Part shown: piece by piece, positions 218 to 63,908 of the stretch | Position numbering within the stretch: the first letter of the stretch is position 1 | Layout of the letters: the number at the start of each line of letters is the position of its first letter | Assembly (NCBI RefSeq): GCF_902652985.1 | Contig: NC_047024.1 | Coordinates: forward strand, 41,850,001-41,914,000 | Direction of reading: 5' to 3' | DNA length: 64,000 nucleotides | From: Pecten maximus | Taxonomy: Eukaryota | Notes under the pieces: model-generated | What the model saw: the letters and a program-made list of their open reading frames with translations, nothing else | Told to the model about the DNA's origin: nothing | The model's database searches: none | Position numbers and translations under genes: made by a program

Positions 218-3200
218 CTTGTGTGCAGTCTGGTTGATCATATCCGGCTGCGCATGTGCAATATCCGGTCACATGGTCACATGATATTGTATTATTTAAA
301 TGACAAGCACAAACAGATGAACATCCATCTCCGTAAAAACCGGAAGGACACACTTGGTAAAATAAATAATTTAGATATATTTCCATATGATATCGAATTA
401 GAAAACAGTTTTATACTCAAAAGAGATTCTAGCAGGATTTTATTCTTCTAGTGAATAAAGGAAAATTACAATTAAATTGAGTGAAATTTGTATTTAAAAT
501 GAAGACAATGCTGTCAATAAGTTTGAGCACACAAGAACATGTTCATGATTTATATACATATATATATGTACAACCATGTCCCAAAATACAATTGGCTATT
601 ATCCTTAACAATAGTAATGGACAGCTGTACTCGACACATCAACCATTTAAATATCCATTAGCTAGCATTCTTTGTAATACATGTACAAATATTGCTTCAA
701 AGGACAATATACTGTATTCTGAAATATTCGCGTTAAACACGATCGGATATATAAGATTTGAAAAAATGATGTTTTTGATCTGATATATTCATTAAAATTT
801 TATGTAAATATCTCAATAGATTTGATGAGATATATATTGATTTGAATGTAGTAAAAGTATACACTAAACATGATTAAGCAGCAAATGCGGATAATCAAGG
901 GTTGGTTTATGATAGGAATGATGTTGTTTTCAAAATCAGGCATTGACATCTCCACAAATATTTAAAACTATCTTAAGCTTAAGAAATTATATTGTTGATT
1001 ATACTCTGTTCTGTCGAAACTGCTGAATTTGAGCTAGGCTAACGTGACCATTTTTTGTTTTGCTTGTCACACATCAAAGCTCCTTATACGTAAATCGATA
1101 TACAGACTGTCTGTCAAATTCATATATTGATATCAATATCTAATTTTGATAGTTTACACTTTACCTTCAATGCAGTTTGTTCCGCTGTAACCCGGTTTAC
1201 ACACGCACGTGCCGTTAGAACTACAGGTGGCTGTATTGTTTCTGTCACATGTGCACGTTGAAACGCATCCAGCTCCGTACGTCCACAGAGGACAAGCTGT
1301 ACGGAAATAAATCAAAAGAAGTATAAAGGTCATTTGTGACCCTTCGGAACAGTACTACGTGAGGTTGCGATGCTATTGATATCATAGAATATTTCAAATG
1401 ATTTTGCACCAAACAAAACATGGTTCGGGAATATCAAGAGTATTTGTGTATGAAATGTCCCCACATGACTGAGGTAGCCTGAGCAATACACTAAAGACAC
1501 AGTATATCAAGTTTGAGGGAGGAAGGCATTCAAACGATTTAAATTCGCATCATTGTCAATTAGTCTATTCTTAAAGTATCTTACTTTCGTTACAGATAAG
1601 TCCAGTGTAGCCTGTAGTGCACGCACAACTCCCGTTCACATGACTACACGTGAGAGTGTTGTTTTGAATGCATGAACAGTTTTCAGTACATCCTGCTCCA
1701 TACGTATAACCAGAGCAAGCTGAAAATATGACAAAACGCCATTGGCATTATGTAACTCGGAGGAACGATACGCCAGGTTTATCTGTGTACTACGCATGCA
1801 TTAATCAAAATTCTAGCAATCACCATTAAACATTCTGTATTACACATGTGTCTGTCAATTATCAGTGTTGTAAATAAATGTAAGAATACCATATCTGTGG
1901 TTATAGAGATTAGTGTTTAATATATGATGAGTTTACGTCATACGAATACTTACCAGTTTCACAGTTAGTATCGATGTAGCCTGGCTTACACGTGCAGGCA
2001 CCGCTCATGTCGTTACATGTTTCGCTGTTGGCTTGGACACAAGTGCAATCATTTCCACAATCGTTCCCAAATTTCCAAGGAACACACGCTGAAAGAAATA
2101 CAAATCTTAATATATACATTGTGTATCAATTTAATAACCTTAAATATCACTCAAGTTCTGATTATAAGGTGCGTACTTTTTCTGGAAATGTTCCATCGTC
2201 TCGTTTTAGTTCCCGATAAATATTTCCCTCATAATTTTGCCCGTTTCACAACTGCCTTGCCAAATGATATGCTTAACAACCATGTGTTATTGTTTTTATT
2301 TACACCGCAGTGCTTAACCGTGTTCAAAACATTTGACCTCCAACTGTTCTGATGGACTAGCCTCTAGTTGGGACTTATCGGTGTTCGAGTCGTATGGAAT
2401 AAACTTTGGTGATGGTAAAATACACACAGAGATAAAATACATCGCATTGGTCATGACTTTTGGACCAAAACTGGTCATGATTTTCGATAAGTTGAGGACC
2501 TTGAATCATAGACCATTAAAGCAAATCACAAATATACGAAAAAAGGGTTAAAATAGTCACTGTCCCTAATTGTAGTGATTTGAAATATAGTCACGACATT
2601 TATAGGCCTGTGTCAATTCAGGCAAATATTGTCGTCAAAAGAACAAAATGAATAAAAACGAACTAATCATTCCATTTCCTTTGTTTAGCGAATTTATATT
2701 CCAAACACAAAAATACAAAAATTCGTTTTGGAACACTCGTCTCGTCGACAAACTAATTTGGTATTTCGTGTAAACATACTTTGAATACACACATTCATCA
2801 CCTTCAGGTCGGTTTCCGAAATATTTGTCAAAATGAATGGTTTCTTGAATAAAAACAATGATATCATACCTACTAAGTCAAGGGGTTATTGAAGTATCTT
2901 ACTGTGACGTTTGCTTGTGTGGTGTCGTCTGCATAAATATTTGCGCGGAGTAAATTTACAAGTGTTCTGTTAATAAAGCAAACAAACTGAATGGTTTACA
3001 TATTTTAAGATACTCCAATTTTCTCCAAAATCACATAATTTCCAAATATATTTCAATAGACATTTGTCGTTCATTCAATATAGATAATATACTTTTCTTC
3101 ATACGAACTATCTTTTGTCGCGTGGTGACTCGGTTTACCGTAATAAGTTGGTAGATTGGGGGAGTTTTAACATGAACCCCTACGTTTGACGGTTGTTTAC

Positions 3201-6200
3201 CAAGTTTATCTGATTTTCGTAGATAACAGTTAGCATTAGGAAAAGACACTCTAAATCTCGTGTTGTAAAATAACCGTGAGTTGTTTGGGAACCTCGTTTT
3301 GTCTCAACTTGAATATATCGAAACATAATAATCTTTATAAAATGATTCACAAATAAAAATAGCAAAGGGTATCGGTAATATAAGTGTGTATACTTACTCG
3401 ATTCACAGTTTGTCCCAAAATAACCAGAGTTGCATGCACACTCTCCGTCGATACTACTACAGGTCGCCGTGTTGGCCTGAATACACGTGCAATCACTGAC
3501 ACAACCAGATCCATATTTCCACTCACTGCACGCTAATACAAACGAAATTCTGTGTTATTGTATGTTACGTACCTCAAACTTTACTTATACAAATGTATAT
3601 AGAGACCAACCAACCACTTGATTTCCCATAGACTTTAGTGTTAACATTTTCGAGTATTTCATTCAAATTCTTGAATTCAATATGACAATTATGGTTTATA
3701 ACAAAAGTTTAGGGTCTGATATAACACCTAATCAAAAAAAAAGTTGGGTTCTTCAGCTCAAATTTTCTCCAGGGTAGCCATTTTGAAAATGGGTAAATTT
3801 CGCAGTAAAAATTCTCAAAAATCTTAAAAAATTACCTGTTAATTGTTATTACCTGAACTTTGGGGAAAAAAATCAATCGGACTTACGAAATTAATATCAA
3901 CATTTCTTATTGATAGTTACCTATCAGGCTACATATCTATTTTCTCGCTTCATAACATACTGGCCAATCAGTGGCTGCCAGACATTTTATCCTTAGCTCA
4001 ACTTTCTATACACAGGGGCTGTTTCAAAAATCTGTTTTTTCAATTGGTTGGTTGTTCCCTATAACATCCCTTCTTCTTCAACCTATGTGGAAACATGTTC
4101 TGCTTGTTTCGATAAGCAAGAACTTGCTCTCATCACTACGATTTCCGTGGTAAATGTCGACTACTCTACTCACCGAGAAGTTGACAATGCAATATTTTGG
4201 GGATGCATGTTGACAATAATCGTAGGAAAGGTTTATAGACGACAACATGATCGCCTTTGGACGTAGTCTTTTTTTTCTTGTGCGTTATGAAGGCAGACGC
4301 TTTGCGTGTTTGTTGATATGTCTAAGGTTCTATTGAAAACACCGTAGTTCTCATTTTTTGACAAAGTGACATCACCCGTATTTGGCATAGATTGTTTATG
4401 ACGGGTGTCGACGATAAACCTGAAGACACTTATTACTCTAAACACAGGGTTTTATTCTCATAGACATTTTTTTTTGCCTAAGGTCTTCATGCAAATTCGT
4501 TTGTTTTTTTAAATATTTGTTTGCCCTCTTTTTATCGATGTTTGATAATGTATCAGCATTATCTGTTATCTTTAATCAGAAACATGTTCAGCTTTAGCGG
4601 GAAAAATTGAAAATTCGAGAGACGAATTTAATATTTAAAACGATAAATACATTTTTTTTTTAAATTATGTGAGTGGTAAAATAATCCCCTCATACCCTTA
4701 CAATCGATGTCTGACTGTCTGAAGCAGTGAAAAGCGCTCTGGAAATGTACTGGAATACATTTTGTATTATACATATGTACCAAGCAGAATTGACGCAAGA
4801 TCGTTAAAAAACAAAAATATAAAATCAAAAACCATTAGCTTTATGAATCTCGTGTATACCAACCGGTGTCACAAGTAATTCCGGAGTATCCAGGGTTACA
4901 CAAACATTGCCCGTTTTCATTAATACAGCTGGCGGTGTTAGCCTGTACGCATGTACAGTCACTGCTACAACCATCACCATACTTCCAGGCGCTACATGCT
5001 AAAATGAATATTAAAACATTTATTGTTAAGTGAAACATGAACTAATAAAATGTTATCGGTTAATTATAAAAATAAGTGAATTTGCAATTCCTAATGTGTG
5101 TTAACATATGTATATATTTCTGTATTAAGGACTGGGAAATACACGTCCTCTAATCTATAGTCGCCTATCGTCACTCGTGTATTAAGGTGATCATTTAACT
5201 CAACATTTCGTCCCTCAGCTACCAACACACGGCATACCGTTCCTTCATATCGACAAAACAAGTGCTTCGGTGAGGGCTTGTATGTGAGAAAATTGCATGA
5301 AAGACTCAATAGATAGATGTAATATCTGCTAGTGAGATAGAGTAGAGCAAAAAATAAATAAATAGATAAATAAATAAATAAACCTGATCTCTTAGCTGTT
5401 TCATGGTAAAATTATAACGACACTCAATATGTCAACATCTTTTTGATAATTGTTGTGAGTTACATAGGTTGAGTCTAATTGTAGTGAAATCTATTGTTTT
5501 ACTAGAATCAATCCAACTGTATAAGACACTACTGACATAGTCCCATATAGTCACAATAAGGCAAAATTAGACACATACAGACACTTAAAGTCACATATAG
5601 TCACAGTTGAAAACACGTGGGCACGTACATACACCTATCGTCACACATAGTCACAATTAAACACAGATACATAAGGCTTTTGTAGTCAAACATACAATTT
5701 AGTCACAAAAAAACCCACCATAATCCATAAACAGACATGTATAGTCACACTTAGTCACACAATAACCACAGTAAGATACATACAGATAATTTTACTAACA
5801 TATAGTCACAGTAAGGTCAGTTAGGCACAAAAAGTCACATATAGACACAGACACAGAAAAAACATATGTACACACCGATATTCACAAATAAACAAAGGTA
5901 GGAAAGAAAAAGTACAGTTAGTCACATTTAGGCAGATATCCCTAGATGGGCACGGTTTCATAGTTGATAAAATCTTTATTCTATAATTACCATTTTCACA
6001 GTTCGTCCCAATGTAACCTGCACTACATGTACATGCACCGTTCACATTGTTACAAGATGCTGAGTTAGCTTGTACACATGCACAATCACTTCCGCAGCCG
6101 GATCCGTACTTCCAGTCGCTGCAACCTGAAACAAATATTGTAGTTGTTGGATGAAACATTCAACGCGCTCGTATCTAATGGCACAAGTGCTTGTAGACTG

Positions 6201-8101
6201 CAACATTGCCTGATTTCATATAATTCTCATTGTACTTTATCACTTCAGTCGAGAAAACAGTAATTAAATGAAAACCAATTGATCCAACTTACTAGATCCA
6301 CACGTATCACCCCTGTATCCATCTTTGCATTTACAAAAAGGGAGGCTATTCGTGTCACAGGACGCGGTGTTCTGTGAGTTACATACACCGCAAAAGTCAA
6401 CAGGGCCACCCGTCACGGTTCCACAATTGACGATGCAAACTGTGCAAAAAAAGAAGCGGAATCTTTTTTTAAGCACAAGTTCGTCTTTTTCGGATTTGGA
6501 TTTAAAAGAGTTGATTTAGAACAATTACCCTATGTCGTTTAAACATATTTTCAAATTTGTAGCATTGATATATTCATGTGTGAATAATTTCTCCATCTCC
6601 ATTATCAGTGAATTTTGTAAATGTTGATGTTTATATTAACACGGAAACCAAATACGTAAATACAGTTTGTCTTATGTCTATAATCATCTATATGCGGGGT
6701 TCAGGTATCATTCAGAGCTTACCAAACACTGAACTTAAATGATTGAATAATCAAAATTCCCTCAATACAGATAGAATGATGAGTTTTTCTTAATTCATTC
6801 CGTTGAAAAAAAATATGTAAATCAAAAGCGAAGTAACAAATAATGATGTCACTTTTATGATACGGCAGTGCTTGATTATACACAATTATATATATCATTT
6901 AACCATACCTATACCGCCGTCTCCAATTATTGACTCTGGGGCTGTAAATCAAAATTAAACGTCACTTTAAATTGCTCCAAACACGGACGAATATCAAAGT
7001 AAAAGGAATCTCTTCACTTATTTATTAAAAATATACCCTACCTCATACCATGTTGAAAAGGCAAGAAACATTGTCATTTGTTAATGTACAACATACATGT
7101 TTATACATGATATAATGAAGAATCATAATTTGGAGAATAAATGGGGTTTCTAAAACTGCAGACAGGCTCTTCATACGACCTTGGCTATTTCAATGACGTT
7201 TAATCCCTTGGAATGAGAATAATAAACTTATCGGATTAAAAGTGTTTTCTGACTTAAACATTACATTTCTAAGAGGATCATTCACTCTCATAATATTCTA
7301 AAATCATTGTTTCAGGAAACAACTCGCAATGGTAGTAATCTGAATTTCTGTTTGTCAATACACAGTACGTTTTTTTATCAGATATGTAAACACATGGTTG
7401 CATTTTTGTTGAATAATTATTACGGGCAATGCCATATTTCAAACTACATTCCATACGTGCAATGACTTAAATAAACGACACAGTGACACATACATAGTAT
7501 CAAACATGTAGAATTCAGTTAATCAAATGTATACTGAAAATAAATAAATACAAGTGTAATCAATGTTTCAGGATGTGTGTGTGTCAAATAACTTTACCAC
7601 TTCCGGTGAGATTTGCAGCAGGAACAGCTCCTGAAAATGACAAAACCATATTTCACTTATTTTTGCTTGTGAAGTCTATTCAAACAATCTTTTTATTTCA
7701 TTAAGATTGCAAAATTCAAATAAATTTACATATTATTGTATCTGATAGAGGTTTTTATTTTACTAACCACATGATTTAGAAAAAAAAAGAAAAAAAAGAT
7801 ATTGTTCACTATATTCAATTATTACGCATTGCATCATGCGTTACAGGGTGTTTGATACGAGCATGTTTTTCTTCAATGCATGCTGCTTATTTATTCTTAT
7901 CGAGAAGGAACAATTGTGATGTAATATACTATGGGAGCTTACGTTTTCCAAGATGAGTTTTACGTTTCTTTGAGCATGTACTTCCGCTCCATCCATATTT
8001 ACATCGACAACTTCCGGTCACATGGTCACAATAACGGGAATTTCCACGTATGCAGTTACACTTATGTGTACACCCAGACCCGTATGTCCACTCAGGGCAA
8101 G
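218..8101 (-). CDS. Gene A: partial multi-EGF (MEGF10/Draper/Nimrod-like) receptor, close paralog or allele of gene C. Exons 1-2 are missing at the gap and the 3' end runs off the window.
   Basis: GT-AG phase-1 exons in transcript order: 7943-8101, 7598-7630, 6909-6941, 6293-6439, 5991-6125, 4864-4998, 3398-3532, 1954-2088, 1585-1719, 1165-1296, 218-352. EGF exons are 132-159 nt, each with 8 Cys (e.g. CSDWKYGSGCGSDCACVQANSASCNNVNGACTCSAGYIGTNCEN). No stops seen. Collinear with 24535-33345. Confidence 0.85.
3602..4059. mobile_element. 458-bp MITE-like insertion in a gene A intron
   Basis: Imperfect ~20-bp TIRs (gagaccaaccaaccacttga / tcaattggttggttgttccc) flanked by TATA on both sides; absent at the homologous site in gene C (~29180). 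Confidence 0.8.
5525..5930. repeat. Degenerate low-complexity (agtcaca/acacata) intronic repeat; homolog at ~30570-31320
   Basis: Many agtcac(a) motifs. Confidence 0.7.
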
Positions 8102-8160
8102 CTAGATAACAAAACAGATAAGCGAGCAGTTCACATGCACATGTATGATCAGAACTGGAC

Positions 8161-8660
8161 NNNNNNNNNNNNNNNNNNNNNNNNNNNNNNNNNNNNNNNN
8201 NNNNNNNNNNNNNNNNNNNNNNNNNNNNNNNNNNNNNNNNNNNNNNNNNNNNNNNNNNNNNNNNNNNNNNNNNNNNNNNNNNNNNNNNNNNNNNNNNNNN
8301 NNNNNNNNNNNNNNNNNNNNNNNNNNNNNNNNNNNNNNNNNNNNNNNNNNNNNNNNNNNNNNNNNNNNNNNNNNNNNNNNNNNNNNNNNNNNNNNNNNNN
8401 NNNNNNNNNNNNNNNNNNNNNNNNNNNNNNNNNNNNNNNNNNNNNNNNNNNNNNNNNNNNNNNNNNNNNNNNNNNNNNNNNNNNNNNNNNNNNNNNNNNN
8501 NNNNNNNNNNNNNNNNNNNNNNNNNNNNNNNNNNNNNNNNNNNNNNNNNNNNNNNNNNNNNNNNNNNNNNNNNNNNNNNNNNNNNNNNNNNNNNNNNNNN
8601 NNNNNNNNNNNNNNNNNNNNNNNNNNNNNNNNNNNNNNNNNNNNNNNNNNNNNNNNNNNN
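8161..8660. other. Assembly gap (exactly 500 N, probably a placeholder size)
   Basis: Run of N. Confidence 0.99.
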
Positions 8661-9904
8661 TTGTAGTCTGAATGTGAAAATATTCTAATCAAAACTCTTT
8701 CCATCTAAAACTGTAATAAATGTATATTTTGCAAAAGTTCCCTATACAAAGGAAGTGAATATAAATTTGTTTAAATTTGATTATACTTTGTTAAAACTAT
8801 AATTTGAAAAACAATATCTATATGGTTTCTATATTCAAATATGTACCGATTCTAAAGCTGTATACACATGACATTCCTTACATTTGTTAATTGTTTTTGT
8901 TGATACTTTTGTAACTTTGTGTAAATAATTGTTTCACAGCTATATATGCAATATTTCTCATATCATAACCATCAAAGATATTTTAGTTTTTGTTGAAATC
9001 CTTACAATTATCTTCGCAAAACCTTTTGTATTCCTATAATATTAAAAACTTCAAATTCATGTTTACAATTTACCTCAATTGTTATTGTTGAAATCCTAAG
9101 ACTGTGCCAGTATTTTTATGTTAAAGCCATGTTTACAGTTTATACCATTCAATATGTTTGATAATTGTTGAAATCTTAAGACTGTGCCAATATCTAAGTA
9201 TTTTATGTGTCAAAGCCGTGTTTGCAGTAAAATGTAATAACTTAATGCTGATACATGTTACTAGTAAGTTGCATCTTTAACTAAATACTCTTTGAAATGT
9301 TTACTTTTAAGTAAATGTTGTATAGGTTGTTTGATATATATGTGTTTACAAGTTTTATGATTTAAAAATGTTTATAGTTCTCTGTCCAATATATGCAAAT
9401 ACTCAACTATACTATAGATGTTTTAGGTTTTATATACATGTGAAATACCTCATGGATAAGATGAAGCATTATTGATGTATTTTTTTTAAAGGACTGTGCT
9501 TCATCTGCTAAAAGTTTTACAAATACTTAATAAATGTTAAACTATGCAATGAGTTGTAAAACATTATGAATAGAAGTATTGTGTTGTTGTCTCTGTTCAT
9601 ACTCTTTGATGTTAATCAAGATTATAATTTGGTCTTTAGCTGGTCAAGGTGGATTCAGAAATCAGATCGGACATGGCCCTTGGCAGGATGGTTATCATTT
9701 TTTCACACTGTTGTGACCAAAGGTATTGATGTAAATGATTGGATGTGGTACAGTCATTTGTTACCTTGACAGGTAATGTCTAGAGGGTGATCGGTGTTGC
9801 TTAAATGTGTTACCTTTTAAATTTTTCTCTAATGTACTTGACAACTTAAAATGAAGCATAATTTTCTTATTGAAGTGAATGTTTATATAAAAAAAAGGTT
9901 AATA

Positions 9905-9965
9905 GGGAAAATTGAACCCTAGACCTTCAGGTTAATAGTTGAACGTTCTAACCTACTGTGACTGA
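9905..9965 (-). mobile_element. tRNA-derived SINE head or degenerate tRNA
   Basis: Minus strand cagtaggttagaacgttcaactattaacctgaaggtctagggttcaatt has D-arm, anticodon-arm and T-arm-like spacing but is degenerate. Confidence 0.4.
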
Positions 9966-10434
9966 TGCTTTGTAGATTGTGTATCGTTAGAGTACTGGTT
10001 ATTGGCCGTTCCTTCCCCACTGTTGCCGCTACACATACCCATTACATGTTGTGACTTGTTTATTAAAAAAGATCCCCCCTTCACTTTTCTAGACAGACAT
10101 ACATTCTTAGGCCGTACAAGGTTTACTTTCCTCATTGCATCATCTACGAGTATAGGTTGGGGTTATGGGGGGGGGGGGGAATTAAGCACTGGTTTGCATC
10201 CTACATTCCAAGCATACGTAGTCTAAGGTCTTTGCTCCTCCATTACGTTAAGGTATCTTGTGATGTTACACATTCCAGACTTGTCGTGACTTGTGCGACA
10301 TTTTCTAAATATAGGTACTGTGTATAGGTTGATATCAATTAACTCCTCCCTTTCTGACCGCGATTTATCAAATTCCATCAAGAGGATTTGACCTATGGCG
10401 CATTTTGACCATACCGTTCTGGGGGTGGTCCTCC

Positions 10435-10484
10435 CCTTAGGCTATAATCCTCCTACATAGGTAAAGGAGGATTATAGCCTAAGG
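10435..10484. repeat. Perfect 20-bp inverted repeat with 10-nt loop
   Basis: ccttaggctataatcctcct-acataggtaa-aggaggattatagcctaagg. Confidence 0.92.
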
Positions 10485-10611
10485 CTACACATTCCAGGCT
10501 ATTGCATCATCTGACCTTTGCACATTGCATCATCTGACCTTTGGCCATATGACCCGGTCAAGGTCAAATCCTCCGAGGATGGGAGGATGTGGCACCTGTA
10601 AAACCACCCTA

Positions 10612-10931
10612 CTATCGTGCCCTCTCAACACCTCATCTATATCGCATATCGTTCCTTCTCAACACCTTACTTATATCACATCTCGAGCCCTCTCACCACC
10701 TTACCTATATCACATATCGTGCCTTGTCAACACCTTACCTATATCACATATCGTGCCCTCTCAACACCTTATCTATATCACATCTCATTCCCTCTCTACA
10801 CCTTACCTATATCACATATCGTGCCCTCTCAACACCTTATCTATATTACATCTCGTGCCCTCTCTGCACCTTACCTATATCCCCTCTCGGGCCCTCTCAA
10901 AACCTTACCTATATCACATATCGGGCCCTCC
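10612..10931. repeat. 34-bp minisatellite, ~9 copies, derived from the exon/donor junction of gene B
   Basis: Unit gtgccctctcaacaccttacctatatcacatatc, recurring every ~34 bp from ~10621 to 10893. Confidence 0.95.
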
Positions 10932-13900
10932 CAGCCACGGTTACAGACACAGACACCTGTTGCCTTGTCACATAGGGTGGTGTGATCGGCCACACAGTCA
11001 CATAGTCCAATGCAAGCTATTCCGTACGTATCATCTGTACAAACTGTCAAAAATCTAAATACTATGTTATAGAAAGTTATGCATAATTTATCCCAATCAA
11101 TTGTTTAGAGTTGATTCTACTTCGGAGATATATCGTTCTTTATGAGGAAACTGTTTTATTATAGTTGAAATTCCCTACAGTTAATATTCCTTTCGGTTTC
11201 GTGATAAGGCAACTGAAGTCGTTTGATAGTTGTATCTTTCCAAAACTTGTCACAAATGATATATTCTAAAAAAAAAAAGTACAAATATGTTATAGATTTC
11301 GAAAAAAAAAGACGGAAAGATCTACTTAGCAAAGGATATAATTTATTATCTAATGCATGGACTTTCGATAATAACGATAACAGGGTTATCTTAGTGGGCG
11401 CAGTTTCCAATTGAATAATAAGAATGGGATTAAAAGTTGTCATCTTGCCCGATATCAATAAAAAAAAATTGATCACTGACACATCTGATGACGTAGAAAT
11501 AGAATATGATCTAAATATTTCTCATTTCGATGATTGATAAAGAGTATTAATTGTACATGTACATATCGATGTATATATATCTTACCAGTATCGCAAGTAT
11601 CACCTATATATCCCGGCTGGCAAGTGCATGTCCCAGTCACGTGATTGCACACTTTGTAGGCGTTCGGCGGACATGAACATGATTGTAAACACTGGCTGCC
11701 GTATTTTAAAGGACTGCAGACTGAGAAGAAAACAAACCATAATGATGCATTACTGAAATACTGTTTTAATGTCACTATGTTGGGTGGTGCGTTGTAAGGA
11801 CACACATATATGCTGCTTATGTTCGTCCAGTCATGAGAACACGAGCTTTAATCCCACAGTTAACGAACACATCCTGGCATGGACGAAGTTATAAATCAGA
11901 CAATGTTTACAAGTATTTATAAGTTAATATACACGTATCGAAAACATATTTGATTTGATATAGATTATTAAAAGCCGACAGTGCACGTTAAAGAGGTTTC
12001 AAACTAATATTACAAATATCTTCTGGCCTTTGTTTGTAAGTAAGAAGAATGGGAGCATCTCGCAGACAACTACAATTTTATTTTGATTTTCAAACTGCAT
12101 TTTTTTTAAACTGCATTGTTAGCTTTTAATTATAGATTTTATATTTAAATTAGCACAATGTCATACAGAGAAACAAAAACGTAAATGTCCACCTTTGTCA
12201 CACAAGGGTTGATCGTATCCCACAACACATGTACAGTTTCCGGATACGTGGTCACATGAAATGGAATTATTCACGTGGTAGGTGCATTCAGACGTACATC
12301 CGGAACCATGAAAACCGATAGGACACACTAGATAAACATGAATTCACAAAAATATAAAACAAAAAGTGAAAATAAACATATGTACGTACTTTTACTTCAA
12401 CGCGGCCTACTTTTGTTTCATTCATGTCCAGACGGTAATTTATGGAAATGAAATAGTGGTCTTACATATATTTCGCTGAAATTTAAATGAAATGTAAAAA
12501 TGTATAATAGTATAAACATTCAACAATTCTGAAAATGCAGAAAGCGAACATTCATCTTATATAAATGCAATAATAGAAACAATCAATGTATTTCAAAAGA
12601 TAGTTCTGCACGGTCTGAATGCAATTTTGAAACCTGTTACGCTTTGTAACATTTCCGAAAATGATAACGTGTAATATCTTATTAATTATTTGAAATACCT
12701 AAGTAGGAGTGAGGAGAATACCTCAACTTTATATCTATCACAACTACATTCTCATATGTACATGGTTTTGGTTCGTAGCGTCTAATTTACAATAAGAGTA
12801 CAATTACCTTCAGTACAGTTTGCGCCTGTGTAACCCGGTTTACAAATACACGAGCCGCTGAAATTATATGCATCCGTATTGTTTTTGTCACATGTACATG
12901 AAGAGACACATCCAGGTCGGTAAGTCCAAAGCGGACAAGCTATGAAGGTAACCAAAAGTAATACGTCCCTGATTGCCGTTCATTTTGATATCACGTGATC
13001 AAATATATAAAAAGTATATAGTGTTATGTACATAATCATGACAAATTAAAATAAATGAATATAAATAAATTTGTCAATAACTTGCACAAGTATCTATCTC
13101 AAAACATCTTGAACACATACAGTATTCATTTAGCATCGTTGTGATGCATTTTAACGGTCATGATCAGTCAAAGCAAAACCGTTAAAGTAAAGGAAGGAGC
13201 GGGGGGTCTTTAGTAGAAATATAAACCAATCAAATGTTTTTGTTTGATGTAGGCAAAAGTGTTATCATCAAAAAATGTTTAGACAAAGATAAATGGACTG
13301 CAATATGGAGGTAACCATTTTCTGCTTTGAATTTATTCTTTTCTAACAATCAAATTCTATATAATATCATCAACTCTGAAGCTTACATCATGCGAACCAT
13401 TTCACCTATCAGATAGGCATATATGTCGCATAACTAATGATGTTAAATAAACTGAACACGTGTTCTTCAATAATAATGATGATTTAGCGTATATATTATC
13501 ACAAATGGGATAAATGGGTCAAACTGACTTCCTCGCTGTTTGTTCAACTCAAGAACATCTTACTTTCGTTAAAGGAAACCCCAGTGTAGTTTTGCATGCA
13601 TGAGCATGTTCCGTTCACATAATTGCACGTCAAAGTGTTGTTTTGGACACACTGACAGATCTGTTTGCATCCCGTGCCAAAGGTATTATTGGCGCAAGCT
13701 GAAGAAAACATTTAAGTTACCGTAAATGTCATTCAATATGCGGAACAATTTACAATGACCAACCATAGTTTTAATTGTCATTATGATATGCATTAAATAC
13801 TGATGTTAGTCAAATTCAAATTAAGAATGAGTCACAGTTGGGTTCATTGCAAAAGAAGAAAAGATAACTCCTCATTAGATGTGTTGACTTACCAGTTTCA

Positions 13901-21629: not shown

Positions 21630-22078
21630 CTAATCCAAATCAGCGTAAGTTTCCGAGACGCCTCTTCCTCCCAAACTCTCGTATTCTTCTTGTATACCAG
21701 CGTTTCCATACACTGGCTGTGCTTTAGTCTGCTGTACTGGGGGAAGTGGTAGCGGTGTTTTTGCAATTTTCGGATTTATTCTTGGACTCGAAGTAGCGGA
21801 ATTGGAACTGTAATTTTGATAAGTGGTCGCTGAAACATCCCCTTTTGGTTTGAGATCTTTACCGGCGTTACCAGCCGCTGCAGCAGAAATACCGTCTGTG
21901 TAGTAATACTCGTCCCCACTTGTGGGAACAGGTGGTGCCACCTGTGAACCATTCCCCGCCGGTGTGGACGAGTTGTTCAAAGTATCTCGGCCATAATATA
22001 CCCCGTCTTTATCATTCGGTAAGCCCTTTGCTGTAGGTGTCTTTTGATATCCTGTAGCTTTCGCGGCAACCCCTCCAG
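21630..22078 (-). CDS. Gene C terminal exon: cytoplasmic tail with YxN sites, a Pro-rich segment and YESL-x8-YADL
   Basis: ORF 21630-22094; acceptor AG at 22079-22080; phase matches the previous exon. Confidence 0.88.
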
Positions 22079-36399: not shown

Positions 36400-36494
36400 A
36401 TGATACTTGGTAGTTCTTTACCCATATTATTTGGAGTTGTATGGCTGATGACGTCGATGAGTACAGGCAGTTTACAACCACAGAGGAATGATAG
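36400..36494 (+). CDS. Duplicate copy of gene D exon 1 (signal peptide MILGSSLPILFGVVWLMTSMSTG), orphan or alternative first exon
   Basis: Intact ATG and AG|gtatgt donor; 2 aa differ from 39827-39921; lies inside the 3.4-kb duplication. Confidence 0.55.
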
Positions 36495-50700: not shown

Positions 50701-52955
50701 GCTTCTTTATAATGGCAACAAACATTCTAGTGGCACCGATGCATGTATTTTTTTTTTTTTTTTTTTTGTGATTATCTTTAGAATCCCAGAAAATGACTTC
50801 AAGAAACATAACTTTCCCACGTTGTCATCAATGCCCAGATTAAACTTAATGACTATATTTAACCATTGCTTAACCTCCTTTTCAAAGCATAAAATTAATA
50901 CAATACAATTATGGTCATATATTGTACGTTTATTATGAAGGTTTGTTTGTTTCAATGATTTAGAACCTTAGATCGCTTTGTCCCATGAATGCTTAGCAAA
51001 AGACCATTTAGACTGTAAACTTTTGAAATGATGCTCCTTATAAAAAAAAAGCGAAAGTATATTTCTGTTAGGATATGAAGCATTAATTATAAAAAGTAAA
51101 ATTTCGGGTCTTTCTAAACATAATATTATAAAACAGCGACTATAAAAAATTAAACAATATTCGTCAAAAATTAAAATTAGTAGATTGTCACGGAGACCAT
51201 TGTACAATTAGAATTAGCCCATGTGTTAAGAGGAAGTATGCATGTCTTCGACGAAATCCCATATACTGATCTAGGTCAAATCCGAATTAATTTACATTCT
51301 TAAAATGAGATAAATAGTAACGGCAATATTGCTGTTAGGCTTCTCACCAAGTGATGAATATATTTTACTTCATATCGCACAAAGAAATACAATAATTCCA
51401 ATTGAGGTCATCTTCTACATTATCTTCCTCTCTCGAAACCTTGAGTTGCTAAAGTAAATGTTTGGTTCTTCTCTTCCAGCATGTCCTTCGTTCTTCTATG
51501 GCCCTGACTGTGCCTTAAATTGTACATGCCGGGTGGGTACATCAAGCTCCTGTGATCCAGTGACTGGAGAGTGTACTTGTTTGTCTGGTTACACTGGCAG
51601 CAATTGTGAGCAAAGTAGGTTTGATTATATGCTGAGCTGTACATTGCAGTGTTAACCATTACTTGCTTATATGATTATGCTTACTTAATTTAGTAACAGT
51701 ATTGATTGAATTTAAGCTGTATTTGTAATTCAAACAAAGCAAAGCTGGAATCCCAACATCATCATAGTTATGACATTACGCAGGTTAGTATATAATAACT
51801 TCAGTAACTGACATACATACAGTGTAAATACTGAGAGCTGTTATTTTGTAGCATGCAGTCAGTTTACGTACGGCCAGAATTGTGCACAGAACTGTTCATG
51901 TGACGTAAACAACACAGTAGAATGTAATGCATTTTCCGGTGCGTGTTCATGTAAATATGGCTGGGAAGGAATCATCTGTGATGAAAGTAAGCATTACCGC
52001 TGATTAAAATTATCGTTATAGTGAAACGTCTACATAACAAGAACGATGCCGACGTTAACATTAACTGATCTTCTTTGATGAAAAATGTTATATGGTACAT
52101 ATATTAGCTCACCATTTCCTGGTATCTGATTGGTTGAAATCAAAATAGTCATCAGATTTTGTGCAAACTAAGTTTGAAGGTGTAGTTACAATGCTGTATG
52201 AGACTGCGTTCTTTTCCTAACAAAACTGTTTCAACAGAATAATTTCCATTTCCTGGTATTTGATTGGTTTAAAAAATGCGAGCATTTCTTTAAAAAAAAG
52301 GTGTCTGTAAATTAAACATCAGACAAGTATTATAAAAAATGTCAAATCATTGACTAATTAAAACTTGTTCATTTCTATTTTTGAGTATATATGTGGTATA
52401 TTGTCAAAACCGACTCCTGTCTAATCAGGATCCCTGTCTATGTCAGCTTTATTGCTTGGTCCCGCAATTTTCCTTCTTAAATTATAGCAATTAAAAGTTA
52501 TTTTTTTTTATTATTACTGATCTCTATAAACAGGAACCAAACTGTGTTAAGCGGCAAAACATTTTAATCCCGTTGGCATTTGGTTAAGACAAATTATACT
52601 GTACATAGATAATAGAAACCATGTTCACTTACAATTATTGGCGATCTTAAAACGAATATTTTGCACCTGCATGCAAATCTTTTGTATTGATCCTTTATAA
52701 AAAGGTGGTACAAACTTGTATCTATATTGTCTAAACCAATATTTCTTTTCATAATGATCTCGGGAGTCTGTTAATCATTGTTGGTTGTAGTTTGTTCCAA
52801 CTGGACTTACAGTAAATACTGTGACAAGTCCTGTGAATGTAATCAGACCAATACCGAAGTATGTCATCACGTGACCGGTGAATGCACCTGTAATCCAGGT
52901 TATCAAGGACAGGCATGTAACGAGGGTAAGAATCCAATCAGTTACCTGTTGTTTT

Positions 52956-52989
<34 letters not shown>

Positions 52990-55900
52990 GTTAGCATTTC
53001 AGTAAAATAAAAAACGCTTGTCTATTTGAAACACCAATAATGCAAACAACAAAAACGAGACCAGTTTTCCATTAAGCTTGGATTACCCTAACCTTGTCCC
53101 TCATCTGTATCAGACTTACCTTTACTATTACCCTTGCCCTACACCTTATACCAGAACCATTGGCGAAAACATCGAAACAGTCATGTACACACCAGTAGTC
53201 ATCACCATACGGTGATACATGATTGGTGAATCAGGGCTTTATGTTACATTGATATTTGTGGGTTATATTGGGTTTTTTTCCCCCATTTTACCAACAATAT
53301 TATAAAGTTCCATTTTACCATAATCTGCAAAGGACCAATTTTCGTAGTAATCCAAATATGTAATAAACTGTAATAAACTTCGTCTGAATGCGTATGATAC
53401 CGGGTCAAAGAATACTGACCGTAATTAATAACACATGTCTCATTAATTGATACCATATTTGTAGAAACTTAGAATTTGCTTTAAATGTATAAGTTTATAT
53501 TCACTATGACTTACGATCACATGAATCTGCTTTAGTTTGCCCGGCATATTTCTATGGTACGAAATGCCAGAGTGAATGCGCATGTGACAGAAATCTGTCA
53601 ACTTCCTGTGACCACGTGACCGGAGAGTGTAATTGTATCACTGGCTACGACAGACCAAACTGTAATACTAGTAAGTTACCATTTTTTTATATTTACTTAT
53701 TCATCTTTTAAAATATAAATATCACGAAATATTTTCTATTATTTATCGAAAGTAACAAACGATATGATTGTTTTCTTTATTGTTATGACAAGGAGTATAT
53801 GTAATATTAGAAATAAAAAAAAGATGGAAAATAAGATGAAGAAATAAAAATTAAAGTAAATAAAAACATTGTAACGAACTTTTATATTTCTTTGTAATTA
53901 ATGTGAGTGTTTTCTGTCCTGAACGAGTCTAGCATGTCCGAATGGCTTTTACGGAGACCTGTGTTCAAGTCAATGTGACTGTCCATCTACCGCATACGGA
54001 CTGTGTAATCACATCACGGGTGCCTGCACGTGTAAACCAGGATATGTGGGAGATGCATGTCAAACAGGTGAGACAAAAGTTAATAAAATACCAAAGCTGT
54101 ACGCGGAGTATTAATATGGAGGTTGTTATATTAATGGCGTGTTTTCATCTTTACTTAAGGTGTGTGAGCATCTATTCACTTAAATGTATACATTAACTTT
54201 TACTTTCATCATGTTTCTTTGGTTAAAGTGTGTGCATTTTCAATTTAACGTTCCGAAAAAAAAACATGTTTTATCTCGGGATTTTCGGAGATTATTATTA
54301 TTCTGATCAAGATGATTGACTCATCCAGTTTTCAAGATACTATTCAAATCAAGATCTACTTTTTATAAATACGCGACAGTATATTTCCATCGACATTACA
54401 ATTTCCTTTTTCAGAATGTCCTGATAATTCATATGGGGTAAATTGCTTAGGAGTATGTGACTGCCTGACTACTCATACCTCGTACTGTGACAAAAGAACA
54501 GGTTATTGTGTGTGTACTAGTGGCTGGGAGGGCACAAGGTGTGATACAGGTAGGTTAACAAAACAAATGTTTGATTTGCATATATTTCGGTTTGAGTAAA
54601 TGTGTTAATATGTTCATGTTTAAACATGTTTGTACCTTGCGAATATAACTTAAACATAGACAACAAACAAAGCAAATTATTGTTTTTTGGTTTGTTTGTT
54701 TTTTTTCTGTTTTTTTGTTTGTTTTGTTTTTGTTCTTTGGAAGGCAAACCGTACACAGTGCGTAAATAAATATATTTTTAAAATATTGTTTAAATAGAAA
54801 CTAATAAGATGTTATTTAGCAAAGGAGTTATTTAACCCTGTAGTCTTTTTAAATATCGACCAATGATGAAGCCTTTTCTTCATTTAGCCGTAGCTTACGA
54901 ATGTATAAGCAGAGCTTTGGTATATATCTACATCACATTGCGTGCAATGAAAATACAATGTGAGAAAAAAAGTGGCAACTACTTGCATATATGTTATTAA
55001 AGATTCTTAAAATCATATTAAGCATGATATTTTTGGTAGACAAAAATTTATCAAAAACGACTGTGTAACAAAGACATAATAATGTATCTGTGACAAAACA
55101 CAGCTTCATAATGCCTTGTGTATGTTCTAGTTGTAGCCAGTATCTCGGAGTCCCTGTTAACATCGCCTGTCATTGTTGGAGCAATCGTCGTAGCAGCTAC
55201 ATTATTGCTTGTGTTAATCATTTTGTTTATACTATGGAAAATTTGCAGGTAAGTCTAATTTCATTTACATTATAATACGAATATTATTTGATTCTGGATA
55301 TTTGTACTGTGCATTGATGTTGACTGATCGTCAGTGTACACAATATTTGGTAAATATAGACAGGTTTGAGAGTGCATCGCGAACATTATTAGGTTAATTG
55401 AATTTTCATTAACAACAATCCAAAACTAGAATGACGTATCTATCAATGATCCATGTGCTTTTATGAGTGATATTAACATTCTCACACTCTCCCAATGCCT
55501 AACAGGCGCCATTTTTTTATCTGTTACCCAAATAACATTGATAGTGACAATAAATACAATCTAGCAAGTGTTTAGATGTTCAAGAATGAGTGTTATAGGA
55601 TTATTTCAATCAATGAAAAAAATACCAGGAATAAGTATGTCAAACATAATGAAAACATCTTTTTTCAAACATGTATTCCTAAAATATCATCATTTTGACG
55701 TTTTAAGTATTTTACAATTTGAGGTGTTCTAGCCCATCATAAACTGACATTATGACATCATCACCGAAACCTGCGTGATAAAAAGAAACAACAACTATAA
55801 TCGAACGTTTAATTGACAGATGTTCCTGTACAGAAGTTAGACACCGGGCACATAAGGACAAAGGAGCAGTGCTATTGATGAACTCGCCAATTACTCCCGG

Positions 55901-56610
55901 ATCAAACAATGGTAAGTGTTACTATCTACTCAAACGTGCTAAAGGTTTGGACTCCCCTGAAACTGAAATCCACTTTCCTAAATAAAACTCTTTCGTTTAA
56001 TACTCGTTTTTTACTATCTCTTATTTCAGCTGCAATATCAGCAATGGCTACCACCACGACCCAGCTGAAGCATGACGGGATATATTACTACAACGCAGAC
56101 CTGAAGAAAGCTACCGAAGCTGTGGAAGATAACCCAGATCACTCTCAAAACAGTAAAGACATTGATACATATTACTACGGTGGCATTCAAGGTGCTCCTC
56201 CTCCAGCTAATGCCTCGAACACACCTTCTAAACGTCCTATAAACGAAACATACTATGATGATGGCGATGTTGGTGGAGTTGTTGAACCAGGCATAAATGA
56301 TGCAGAAAAGGGAAAAACCTCTTCAGCAACGAGTTCATATCAGAATGTTTCATCTCCTGCAAAAACTACAAATACACCCGTCCAGAAGGTCAATCGTCCA
56401 GCATTGCCGGCTCTTCCACGGTTTGGATCTGATCTTAATAAACCAACTGAGAGGATTTATAGAAATGAAACTGTCGAAACACCGTTCGGTTCAAAACCAA
56501 CCTATGGTAACACTGGGCGAAAGTTACCGGGGCTTGATGTCAATGATAAGTACGAAAGTTTAGATAGTAACACACGAGACACTTCTAGTGAATACGCCGA
56601 ATTAAAATAA
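47791..56610 (+). CDS. Gene E: complete multi-EGF receptor with N-terminal CCxGY (EMI/Nimrod-type) motif, 13 exons, ~650 aa, 7 EGF modules
   Basis: Exons: 47791-47876 (signal peptide MAYLKYVVLVSLSLGVLG), 48296-48384 (CCAGY), 49300-49458, 49841-49858, 51480-51614, 51852-51986, 52791-52925, 53536-53670, 53933-54067, 54415-54549, 55131-55248 (TM), 55820-55911, 56030-56610. Total 1953 nt, in frame. Confidence 0.9.
52957..52989. repeat. (CAA)11 microsatellite in a gene E intron
   Basis: Direct reading. Confidence 0.95.
56030..56610 (+). CDS. Gene E terminal exon: cytoplasmic tail ending YESL-x10-YAEL
   Basis: ORF 55909-56610; acceptor ttcag ending at 56029; motifs collinear with the gene C tail. 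Confidence 0.9.
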
Positions 56611-62964: not shown

Positions 62965-63908
62965 ATGTCTTACTTTCAATATGTTGTGCTGGTGTGTTTA
63001 GTCCTTTGTGTGAGGGGGAAGGAGGAGAAACTTCTGTGTACGAAAAGGACCAGGTATGTTGAGAAATAGGCAACCTGGGCGAGGAACAAGTTTAAATTGT
63101 TCTTTAAAGAGATTGATGGAAATAAAGCATTCCATATTTTAAAGAAAAGTGAAATGTATATTTTTTTTATTATTATTAATTAATTTAGAAAATTTGGTTT
63201 GCTTTGTTTTCATGTTTTCGTTATTTCAGTATTACTTGATTGTGGTTGTTATAAGGAAACCATACATTTAACATATATCAATAACAATTATCTGAACAGC
63301 AAACGTTTCGTAGATATTTTGATTGGCAAGATGCCTAAATATTGATGAGTCAAAGCATATTGAATTATCCAAAATCATTTTCACGGAAAAAGCAGGTAAA
63401 AAAATAATCTAAGTGAAGTTAATCAAACGAACGATTGTTGTAGGTCTGATTTGATATGTACTATATTAAGTTCATATAATTTTCAATATCCAATTTATTT
63501 GAATAAAAACTCCTATTTGTTACAAGAAAAGTTTCAGAAATCCCTTTGATATACAGAAAAAAATTCAAAACATTCACGAATATCGGTCAATAATTACACA
63601 ATTTTTTTACTCTGTATATGAAGACACATCTAATATCATTTTCATTATTTTCTATATTTCATAATAAATAAAGTAATATGTTTCAAAAACCTATAGCGTC
63701 AACCGCTTTTGACGTAAAATTTATCAATAATGAAATCATTGACAATATTTAAATCTTTGCTGTAAAGGATATCTACTACCTGAGACGAGTCTTTATATTA
63801 CACGCATGTATTCCTACAGATTTTCAAATGGATTGGAAATACGTTACAGGGAAGTGCGGGGTTGCTGTGCTGGGTACACAGAGGTGACAGGCGAGCAGTT
63901 ATGTATCA
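62965..63908 (+). CDS. Gene F: first two coding exons of a close paralog of gene E; continues beyond the window
   Basis: 62965-63053 (MSYFQYVVLVCLVLCVRGKEEKLLCTKRT) and 63820-63908 (FSNGLEIRYREVRGCCAGYTEVTGEQLCI). Same phases as gene E exons 1-2, with a homologous upstream region. Confidence 0.85.

What the first reader, a model, noticed from the sequence alone, without database searches (positions are those of the whole stretch)
218..63908. Rapidly remodelling cluster of six multi-EGF receptors resembling a paired (activating/inhibitory) innate receptor family
Seen: six paralogs share one exon plan (signal peptide, C(C/P/S)xGY exon, EGF1, linker micro-exons, n EGF exons, TM, CSCxEV exon, Tyr-rich tail) but differ in module number (C 13, B 8, E 7, D 4), tail length and Tyr motifs. 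The cluster also has a pseudogene, a chimeric exon and a fresh duplication. Known: CED-1/Draper/MEGF10 and Nimrod proteins are EGF-repeat phagocytic receptors, and birth-and-death clusters with ITAM/ITIM partners typify recognition systems such as KIR, Siglec and Hydractinia Alr. Inference: a lineage-specific variable recognition-receptor locus (immunity or allorecognition), not a single MEGF10 orthologue.
Basis: partly seen in the sequence, partly recalled or inferred. Interest (0 to 1): 0.85.

Follow-up and report, generated by a model that had tools for sequence, protein, structure and literature searches.

The report
Scallop cluster of Draper-like EGF receptors
This stretch of the king scallop genome holds a tandem family of membrane receptors built from one-exon EGF modules, with a tail signalling motif like that of the cell-eating receptors Draper and MEGF10. 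It is a scallop-specific branch of a known receptor type, not a proven activating/inhibitory pair system.

Summary
The window is Pecten maximus scaffold C10:41850001-41914000. It carries six paralogous multi-EGF single-pass receptor genes: A, B and C on the minus strand, D, E and F on the plus strand. A seventh gene, B', lies just outside.

- **Exon plan.** All share one plan: signal peptide, a short CCxGY (EMI-like) exon, 135-nt phase 1-1 EGF exons, a TM exon, a CSCxEV exon and a Tyr-rich last exon. Module counts are C 13, B 8, E 7 and D 4, as reported.
- **Pseudogene.** B has an in-frame stop and three lost cysteines. A satellite and a young transposon sit where its 3' exons should be.
- **Gap.** The N gap lies between that transposon and A's first EGF exon, so A's 5' exons are unseen.
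- **Expression.** cDNA contigs confirm three splice joints; they come from gene A.
- **Tails.** A, C, E and F end in a conserved tandem YxxL motif (ITAM); D has a looser version. ITIM matches are at chance level and no TM has a charged residue.
- **Selection.** dN/dS is about 0.2. Divergence between individuals equals the genome-wide level.
- **Range.** Tail homologues were found only in scallops.

Best reading: a Pectinidae-specific Draper/MEGF10-like receptor family that signals through its ITAM and evolves by exon-module gain/loss and gene birth-and-death. The "paired receptor" reading is only partly supported.

The parts
218..8101 (-). Gene A, cut by the window start and by the gap. In-window EGF exons: 7964-8101 (first EGF), 6293-6439 (8-Cys short-type EGF), 5991-6125, 4864-4998, 3398-3532 (chimeric), 1954-2088, 1585-1719, 1165-1296, 218-352. 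Two more EGF exons, the TM, CSC and ITAM tail lie left of the window (C10:41847359-41849884). Total 11 EGF modules.
   Evidence: The spliced cDNA contigs carry exactly the A-specific differences. Its product's 3' half is XP_033752374.1, 'uncharacterized protein'.
3398..3532 (-). Chimeric EGF exon of A. The body and downstream intron resemble C exon 27216-27350. The 5' end and upstream intron resemble C exon 28660-28794. A has two fewer WKYG-type modules than C.
8161..8660 (.). Assembly gap (500 N, length only estimated). It separates A's first EGF exon from a transposon. A's 5' exons and B's 3' exons may be hidden here or lost.
8661..10600 (.). Dispersed repeat (young transposable element), with 91-99% identical copies on at least 7 other scaffolds. 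It sits where B's TM, CSC and tail exons are expected.
10613..10930 (-). 34-bp satellite (9.4 copies) derived from the 3' end plus splice donor of B's last EGF exon. The same array is 1.1 kb long in B'.
10909..18020 (-). Gene B, a pseudogene. CPSGY (EMI-like) exon core 17979-18020; first EGF 17000-17125; short EGF with in-frame stop 14920-15012; 13893-14027; 13565-13696 (last Cys lost); 12809-12937 (Cys to Tyr); 12200-12325 (Cys to Tyr); 11586-11720; 10909-11043. No TM, CSC or tail exon.
19455..34787 (-). Gene C, 13 EGF modules. Exon 1 (ATG, signal peptide) 34711-34787; exon 2 (QCPIGY, EMI-like) 33981-34063; EGF 33208-33345; short EGF 31673-31795; then 31374-31508, 29972-30106, 28660-28794, 27883-28017, 27216-27350, 26476-26610, 26142-26276, 25668-25799, 24535-24669, 24072-24203, 23371-23505. 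TM exon 22735-22843; CSCHEV exon 22409-22500; last exon 22078 down to the stop at 21630-21632; 3'UTR to about 19455.
   Evidence: The last exon and 3'UTR are covered by 99-100% identical RNA contigs.
21636..21683 (-). C-terminal ITAM of C: YxxL, 8 residues, YxxL, then one residue and the stop.
   Evidence: 2.3% of shuffled tails contain a match
33388..40224 (.). Tandem duplication of a 3.4-kb unit (33388-36809 and 36809-40224). It carries C's exon 1 and exon 2 twice (second copies at about 38133-38208 and 37402-37484). The first 1.6 kb is 99.4% identical and the rest about 93%.
   Evidence: A real duplication and a retained haplotype could not be told apart.
40186..46850 (+). Gene D, 4 EGF modules. 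ECSTGY (EMI-like) exon ending at 40351 (5' start uncertain: ATG at 40186 or acceptor at 40246); EGF 41115-41243, 42675-42809, 43180-43314, 43834-43983; TM exon 44367-44499; CSCAEV exon 45077-45198; last exon 45679-46847 (389 aa, unique in the genome).
46731..46793 (+). D's loose tandem motif: YxxV, 13 residues, YxxI, near the C-terminus. It lies outside the strict ITAM spacing.
47791..56610 (+). Gene E, 7 EGF modules. Exon 1 (ATG, signal peptide, first Cys) 47791-47876; exon 2 (GCCAGY) 48296-48384; EGF 49300-49458, 51480-51614, 51852-51986, 52791-52925, 53536-53670, 53933-54067, 54415-54549; TM 55131-55248; CSCTEV exon 55820-55911; last exon 56030-56607 plus stop.
   Evidence: (only the exons are conserved with F)
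56551..56604 (+). ITAM-like motif of E: YxxL, 10 residues, YxxL, then one residue and the stop.
62965..63908 (+). Gene F, first two exons only: 62965-63053 (ATG, signal peptide) and 63820-63908 (GCCAGY). The rest runs to C10:41937960, with about 12 EGF modules and a tail read in three frames.

Best explanation
The window is part of a roughly 107-kb tandem cluster on Pecten maximus scaffold C10 (order B'-A-B-C, then D-E-F head-to-head with C). The genes encode single-pass type I membrane proteins of the Draper/CED-1/MEGF10 (Nimrod-superfamily) kind.

Shown from sequence:
- Each gene has a signal peptide, a shortened CCxGY/EMI-like element, 4-13 eight-cysteine EGF modules, one TM helix, a juxtamembrane Cys cluster (W-C-x-C-R-C-S-C) and a disordered Tyr/Pro-rich tail.
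- The tail carries six conserved Tyr motifs and ends in a tandem YxxL ITAM.
- Each EGF module is one symmetric phase 1-1 exon, so unequal crossing-over between exons adds or removes modules without breaking the frame. Examples are A versus C (2 modules, with a chimeric exon at the junction) and E versus F (about 5 modules).
- Whole genes duplicate and decay. B and B' are pseudogenes and F's tail is frameshifted.
- Surviving copies are under purifying selection.

Inferred, not shown:
- A ligand clusters the receptors.
- A Src-family kinase phosphorylates the tail.
- The doubly phosphorylated ITAM recruits a Syk/Shark-type kinase, and the YxN motifs recruit Grb2-type adaptors.
- This drives engulfment or scavenging by hemocytes or other phagocytic cells.
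- The juxtamembrane cysteines are probably palmitoylated.
For: Architecture and exon phases.

Splice joints: TM|EGF, EGF|EGF and CSC|tail were seen in cDNA contigs of two samples and not in a DNA run. The contigs are assigned to gene A by their 9+4 diagnostic differences.

EGF type:
- Weak Pfam EGF_laminin, EGF_Teneurin and Stabilin hits on single exons.
- EGF_laminin at 2.6e-09 on the Ylistrum homologue.
- PDB hits to the Tie2 EGF region (5e-17) and SCARF1 (2e-07).
- Atlas neighbours are MEGF10, MEGF11, Draper and SCARF1-like clusters, at 0.89-0.91.

ITAM:
- It sits at the extreme C-terminus of A, C, E and F, although the E-type and C-type tails are otherwise diverged.
- Only 2-3% of shuffled tails contain one.

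Bivalve precedent: ITAM-Syk signalling was shown experimentally in the oyster (PMC6994640).

Selection: dN/dS is 0.21 (A-C) and 0.19 (E-F), below 0.15 between the C module pairs whose dS could be estimated, and dS is saturated in the rest.

Lineage restriction and cluster extent.

Organism.
Against: - No ligand, cell type or tissue is known; the RNA runs are coded and unlabelled.
- The NPxY motif that binds CED-6/GULP in CED-1, Draper and MEGF10 is absent.
- Pfam does not detect an EMI domain on the two short exons, and PF23301 (EGF_PEAR1L) does not ring on these modules.
- The ITAM-Syk step rests on a motif match alone.
- D's motif has a 13-residue spacer and a Val.
- No phylogeny against MEGF10/11, PEAR1, SCARF, Draper or Nimrod could be built, because no reference sequences were obtainable and spliced proteins were not joined.
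Confidence: 0.6

Rival explanations
1. The locus is a paired activating/inhibitory, highly variable recognition system for immunity or allorecognition, comparable to KIR, Siglec or Hydractinia Alr.
For: - Tandem cluster with duplicates, pseudogenes and module-number variation.
- ITAM-bearing members A, C, E and F sit beside ITAM-less tails in B' and two orphan tail copies, where a frameshift removes the motif.
- D's tail is unique and has one ITIM-consensus match.
- An earlier scan note reports ITAM-bearing IgSF clusters in the same genome (not checked here).
Against: - The ITAM-less copies are degenerate. B has a stop, lost cysteines and a transposon. B' has three lost cysteines and a stop in the tail.
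- ITIM matches are at chance level.
- D keeps a loose tandem YxxV/I motif at the homologous position.
- No TM has a charged residue.
- dN/dS is about 0.2 and the modules are ancient.
- Divergence between individuals is at the genome-wide level, and the region is present in the second individual.
Confidence: 0.1
2. These are non-immune multi-EGF membrane proteins. They act in cell adhesion, tissue remodelling, neuronal or muscle development (as vertebrate MEGF10/11 do in satellite cells and retinal mosaics), or general scavenging. They are not pathogen or allo-recognition receptors.
For: - Purifying selection and ancient, well-conserved modules.
- Closest named neighbours include MEGF10/11, Tie2 and SCARF1, which have developmental and scavenger roles.
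- No immune expression data exist.
Against: - Lineage-restricted tandem expansion with pseudogenes is unusual for core developmental genes.
- The tail ends in an ITAM, as in engulfment and immune receptors.
Confidence: 0.2
3. Part of the apparent 'rapid remodelling' is an assembly artefact. This would cover the 3.4-kb tandem duplication, the 98%-identical block at A's 5' edge and the truncation of B. The cause would be retained haplotypes or misjoins around repeats and the two N gaps in a 1.7%-heterozygous genome.
For: - The duplication is exactly head-to-tail with 99.4% identity over 1.6 kb.
- The high-identity A/C block abuts the gap.
- The gap is flanked by a high-copy transposon.
- A second gap lies at a similar place, just downstream of B's paralogue B'.
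- The assembly is PacBio plus scaffolding of a heterozygous animal.
Against: - The distal 1.8 kb of the duplication is only about 93% identical with indels, which is more than typical allelic divergence.
- B's stop codon and lost cysteines are independent of any misjoin.
- The A/C, B/B' and E/F paralogy is at 70-87% identity, far from allelic.
Confidence: 0.3

Closest known systems
Draper (Drosophila) / CED-1 (C. elegans) / MEGF10, MEGF11, PEAR1-Jedi (vertebrates)
   Same: - Type I single-pass receptor.
- N-terminal CCxGY-containing element followed by a row of 8-Cys EGF modules.
- Tyr-rich tail with a tandem YxxL/I ITAM, as used by Draper to recruit Shark and by MEGF10/Jedi to recruit Syk (established knowledge; PMC6219719 listed).
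- The Atlas and NCBI's automatic naming put the scallop homologue with MEGF10.
   Different: - The EMI domain is reduced to about 50 residues over two exons and is not detected by Pfam.
- There is no NPxY motif.
- The ITAM sits at the very C-terminus.
- There is a juxtamembrane CxCRCSC cluster.
- The tail has no detectable homologue outside Pectinidae.
- It is present as a 7-gene tandem cluster with 4-13 modules rather than one conserved gene with 15-17.
Drosophila Nimrod gene cluster (NimA, NimB1-5, NimC1-4)
   Same: - Tandem cluster of CCxGY-motif, EGF/NIM-repeat proteins with variable repeat number.
- It evolves by gene duplication and repeat gain and loss.
   Different: - The modules here are 8-Cys MEGF/laminin-type rather than 6-Cys NIM repeats.
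- All intact members are transmembrane with an ITAM tail.
- The lineage is different (bivalve), so the expansion is independent.
SCARF1/SCARF2 (scavenger receptor class F) and the Tie2 EGF region
   Same: Best solved-structure sequence matches to the EGF modules are Tie2 at 5e-17 and SCARF1 at 2e-07. SCARF is also a single-pass protein with a long Ser/Pro-rich tail.
   Different: There are no Ig or FN3/kinase parts as in Tie2. SCARF tails lack the terminal ITAM and the CCxGY element.
Paired receptor clusters (KIR, LILR, Siglec) and Hydractinia Alr
   Same: Tandem birth-and-death cluster with pseudogenes, and ITAM-type motifs in the tails.
   Different: - The domain type is EGF, not Ig.
- There is no ITIM partner and no charged TM residue.
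- Selection is purifying and diversity is ordinary.

Membership tests
Draper/CED-1/MEGF10 (Draper-type Nimrod superfamily) | N-terminal EMI domain ending in a CCxGY motif | tested here: inconclusive
   GCCAGY is present in E and F. Degenerate forms (QCPIGY, NCPSGY, ECSTGY) occur in C, B and D. Pfam EMI was not detected on the exons or in the genome scan, but the genome scan also rang in no control. The element is about 50 aa with 4 Cys instead of about 70 aa with 7.
Draper/CED-1/MEGF10 (Draper-type Nimrod superfamily) | Row of 8-Cys (laminin/MEGF-type) EGF repeats in the ectodomain | tested here: met
   4-13 modules per gene with fixed Cys spacing. EGF_laminin hits. Tie2 and SCARF1 matches. 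PF23301 EGF_PEAR1L did not ring.
Draper/CED-1/MEGF10 (Draper-type Nimrod superfamily) | Single transmembrane helix, type I topology with signal peptide | tested here: met
   There is a hydrophobic 23-25-residue stretch in a dedicated exon. Exon 1 begins with ATG plus a hydrophobic leader in C, E and F. No predictor was run; this was judged from sequence.
Draper/CED-1/MEGF10 (Draper-type Nimrod superfamily) | Cytoplasmic NPxY motif (CED-6/GULP binding) | tested here: not met
   No NPxY occurs in any tail; D has only NPSF.
Draper/CED-1/MEGF10 (Draper-type Nimrod superfamily) | Cytoplasmic YxxL/I ITAM (Shark/Syk binding) | tested here: met
   YxxL-x8-YxxL in A and C; YxxL-x10-YxxL in E and F; a loose x13 version in D. 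Shuffle probability is 0.02-0.03. Binding itself is not testable here.
Draper/CED-1/MEGF10 (Draper-type Nimrod superfamily) | Orthology shown by phylogeny with MEGF10/11, PEAR1 and Draper | not tested
   Only Atlas feature neighbours are available.
Paired activating/inhibitory receptor cluster | Members with near-identical ectodomains but opposite tails (ITAM or adaptor-coupling versus ITIM) | tested here: not met
   All intact members keep the tandem Yxx(L/I/V) motif. The ITAM-less B and B' are pseudogenes. ITIM matches are at chance level.
Paired activating/inhibitory receptor cluster | Charged TM residue in activating members | tested here: not met
   The hydrophobic cores of the C, D and E TM segments have no charged residue.
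Paired activating/inhibitory receptor cluster | Diversifying selection and high polymorphism or copy-number variation | tested here: not met
   Pairwise dN/dS is 0.19-0.26. Divergence between individuals is about 1.1-1.7% against genome-wide 1.71%. Site-wise tests and copy-number variation across many individuals were not possible.

The most novel reading that the evidence does not exclude
The cluster is a scallop-specific set of ITAM-signalling opsonin receptors. The number and type of EGF modules would be tuned to the greatly expanded bivalve C1q-domain (or similar lectin-like) opsonins, by analogy with MEGF10 and SCARF1 as C1q receptors. It would then be a receptor arm co-expanding with a soluble recognition arm. 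D, with 4 modules and a unique 389-aa tail, would act as a modulatory member.
Probability: 0.12. Interest if true: 0.6.

Novelty: new member of a known kind. Interest (0 to 1): 0.35.

Why it matters
- **A defined system for bivalve innate immunity.** Bivalves lack adaptive immunity and rely on expanded innate repertoires. This is a small (7-gene), physically mapped family of Draper/MEGF10-like receptors with a clean C-terminal ITAM. It gives a concrete place to test whether ITAM-Syk engulfment signalling, so far shown in an oyster Ig receptor, also runs through EGF-repeat receptors in molluscs.
- **A textbook case of exon shuffling.** Symmetric phase-1 exons let a receptor change length by whole modules, and a recombinant exon is still visible in gene A.
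- **Annotation errors to fix.** NCBI calls the A product 'uncharacterized' and gives it a wrong N-terminus. No product of C, D or E came up in any protein search here, but those searches were limited by length band and word filter.

Tried and rejected
- A Pfam EMI scan of the whole genome gave nothing, but it also rang in no control genome, so it is uninformative.
- Pfam on the 28-29-aa EMI-like exons gave no hit.
- PF23301 (EGF_PEAR1L) rings only at three other loci (C2, C13, C17), not here.
- The search for homologous proteins with the whole Ylistrum protein returned only itself and P0001, probably because its poly-Ala run swamped the word filter.
- Restricting that search to the EGF part added only a sponge 'MEGF10' at 36% identity. 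These blanks are limited by the 0.55-1.75x length band.
- The look-up of encoding contigs for P0001: not on record.
- Two further tail-like ORFs (C10:41791075 and 41691273) have no EGF or TM exon nearby. One weak CSC-like fragment lies about 15 kb from the second. Both carry the same frameshift as B', and I treat them as orphan remnants.
- I first read the spliced RNA contigs as gene C. The 9+4 mismatches match gene A exactly, so I reassigned them.
- Runs X8 and X9 give identical numbers and are counted as one sample.
- The N gap was not filled or looked up.
- Literature searches found many bivalve transcriptome papers that list 'MEGF10-like' genes. None characterises this cluster, its exon plan or its ITAM.
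Full report
**Source and identity**

The window is AT-rich eukaryotic DNA (34% GC) with one run of 500 N at 8161-8660. The genome search places it at G000:C10:41850001-41914000. That genome has 918,306,378 bases in 3,983 scaffolds. The closest protein is XP_033752374.1 of Pecten maximus. The genome paper gives exactly these assembly figures, a 44,824,366-bp N50 scaffold and 1.71% heterozygosity (PMC7191990). The organism is therefore the king scallop.

**Checking the observation**

- A six-frame scan finds about 45 cysteine-rich EGF-type open segments. They lie on the minus strand from 162 to 33451 and on the plus strand from 41024 to 54596.
- Thirty-five fit a strict 8-Cys pattern. They have an AG acceptor and a GT donor that make them 135-nt (a few 129-159) exons entered and left in phase 1.
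- Self-comparison gives six genes.
  - A(-) runs from 8101 leftwards out of the window.
  - B(-) runs 18020->10909.
  - C(-) runs 34787->19455.
  - D(+) runs about 40186->46850.
  - E(+) runs 47791->56610.
  - F(+) shows only its first two exons (62965-63053, 63820-63908).
- Module counts C 13, B 8, E 7 and D 4 are reproduced. A has 11 modules and F about 12 once the flanks are read.

**Exon plan**

I read the plan base by base for C, D, E and F.

- Exon 1 holds the ATG, a hydrophobic leader and a first Cys, and ends in phase 2.
- Exon 2 carries the C(C/P/S)xGY motif and ends in phase 1.
- EGF exons follow, all phase 1-1.
- The TM exon goes from phase 1 to phase 2.
- The 92-nt (122-nt in D) CSCxEV exon follows.
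- A last exon holds the Tyr/Pro-rich tail.

I did not find 'linker micro-exons'. A, B and C instead have one short EGF exon after the first EGF. In A it is 147 nt with 8 Cys. In C the corresponding acceptor is lost, and the next in-frame AG gives 123 nt with 6 Cys. E has no such exon in the scans. Between E and F only the exons are conserved, so a sizeable hidden exon in E is unlikely.

**RNA evidence**

Contigs of two samples (X8 and X10; X9 duplicates X8) show joints at 24072|23506, 23371|22843 and 22409|22078. All have GT..AG ends on the minus strand, and none appears in the DNA run X4. These contigs differ from C at exactly the 9 and 4 positions where A differs from C. They are therefore transcripts of gene A laid on its paralogue. 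They prove the shared exon boundaries and show that A is expressed. C's own last exon and about 2.2 kb of 3'UTR are covered by 99-100% identical contigs, while its introns are not. Tissue is unknown.

**The gap**

- The left flank (7900-8160) is A's first EGF exon plus 59 nt of intron. It is 98% identical to C 33144-33404, whereas the rest of A/C is about 79% identical in introns.
- The right flank (8661-10600) is a dispersed repeat with 91-99% identical copies on many scaffolds.
- That repeat replaces the sequence which, in the paralogue B', holds the TM, CSC and tail exons.
- Continuity across the gap cannot be shown. A's first two exons and B's 3' end are either inside it or lost. I did not try to fill it.

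**Remodelling**

- B is a pseudogene. Its defects are a stop inside the short EGF exon (14920-15012), three modules with a lost Cys, a 34-bp satellite grown from its last exon-intron junction, and then the transposon.
- B', outside the window, also has three lost cysteines. Its tail has a stop and a frameshift that removes the ITAM.
- A and C are recent duplicates. dS is about 0.1 in the EGF cores, clearly below intron divergence, which hints at exon homogenisation.
- A lacks two of C's six WKYG-type modules. At that point exon 3398-3532 is recombinant.
- E and F are older duplicates (dS 0.85). E lacks about five of F's modules, and F's tail reads in three frames.
- The 3.4-kb tandem duplication carries C's exons 1-2 twice. 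It is a mosaic of 99.4% and about 93% identity. I could not rule out a retained haplotype.
- Module order is positionally conserved in all genes; the last three module types are shared. Number variation is concentrated in the middle of the array.
- Modules within C have saturated synonymous sites but only 11-27% non-synonymous differences. The array itself is old and conserved, so 'rapidly remodelling' applies to copy and module number, not to sequence.

**Tails**

- The C-type and E-type tails share six Tyr motifs. They end in YxxL-x8-YxxL (A, C) or YxxL-x10-YxxL (E, F), one residue before the stop.
- Only 2-3% of shuffled tails contain such a motif.
- D has a YxxV-x13-YxxI version at the same place.
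- No tail has NPxY.
- ITIM-like matches (0-2 per tail) are close to the shuffle mean of 0.3-0.7.
- TM cores carry no charge.
- A conserved W-C-x-C-R-C-S-C cluster straddles the TM and CSC exons. Palmitoylation there is my inference.

**Relatives**

- The C tail found only two relatives among 1.84 billion representative proteins: the P. maximus A product, and a Ylistrum balloti protein that NCBI names 'MEGF10, partial'.
- In the genome the tail types occur only in this cluster, apart from two orphan remnants. D's tail is unique.
- The module type is nearly confined to the cluster at E<=1e-6.
- The Ylistrum protein's nearest Atlas clusters are MEGF10, MEGF11, Draper and mollusc SCARF1-like. Its best solved relatives are the Tie2 EGF region and SCARF1.
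- Papers list 'MEGF10-like' genes in many bivalve expression studies. None describes this cluster.
- ITAM-Syk signalling has been shown in an oyster Ig receptor (PMC6994640).

**Verdict**

It is best read as a Pectinidae-specific tandem family of Draper/MEGF10-like, ITAM-bearing receptors that change length by whole-exon modules. The family undergoes gene birth and death under purifying selection. The activating/inhibitory pairing, hypervariability and immune or allorecognition role are not supported by what could be tested. They remain open only in the weak sense that expression and population data are missing.

That is the main limit on the family assignment.

Noticed in passing
window 10613-10930 (and C10:41833247-41834359 in B'): A 34-bp satellite whose unit is the last 12 nt of the final EGF exon plus the splice donor and about 20 nt of intron. 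It places 9 (B) to about 33 (B') tandem donor sites directly after the exon in the two B-type genes.
   Followed up: partly
window 23500-23930: The intron of gene C holds a very high-copy repeat. Summed contig depth reaches about 2,800 in a DNA run, against about 40-100 elsewhere, and many contigs break there.
   Followed up: no
window 28779-29221: A 109-bp tandem repeat (4 copies, 89% matches) lies in the C intron next to the module region that differs between A and C.
   Followed up: no
C10:41747905-41827093 (loci L017-L025), minus strand: A different short Cys-rich motif recurs at least 11 times at intervals of about 2-10 kb (one 34-kb break), left of the cluster. It looks like another tandem gene or repeat family. 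No regular EGF modules occur there.
   Followed up: no
window 5991-8101 versus 31374-33345 and other A/C exon pairs: Synonymous divergence of A/C exons (about 0.1) is well below the divergence of the introns between them (about 21% mismatches). Exons, and especially the 5' end, appear to be homogenised by gene conversion.
   Followed up: partly
C10:41791075-41791344 and C10:41691273-41691566 (L003, L004): These are orphan copies of the tail exon with no EGF or TM exon nearby. They share with B' the frameshift that removes the ITAM.
   Followed up: partly
C2:26795934-26796936 and C2:42096660-42096779: These are the only other loci with similar EGF modules or with a PF23301 (EGF_PEAR1L) hit above the cut-off. 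They are candidates for the conserved Draper/MEGF10 orthologue of the scallop.
   Followed up: no
window 21492-21605: A 109-112-nt deletion relative to the reference lies in C's 3'UTR. It is seen in both RNA contigs and a DNA run of another individual, so it is an indel polymorphism, not an intron.
   Followed up: partly
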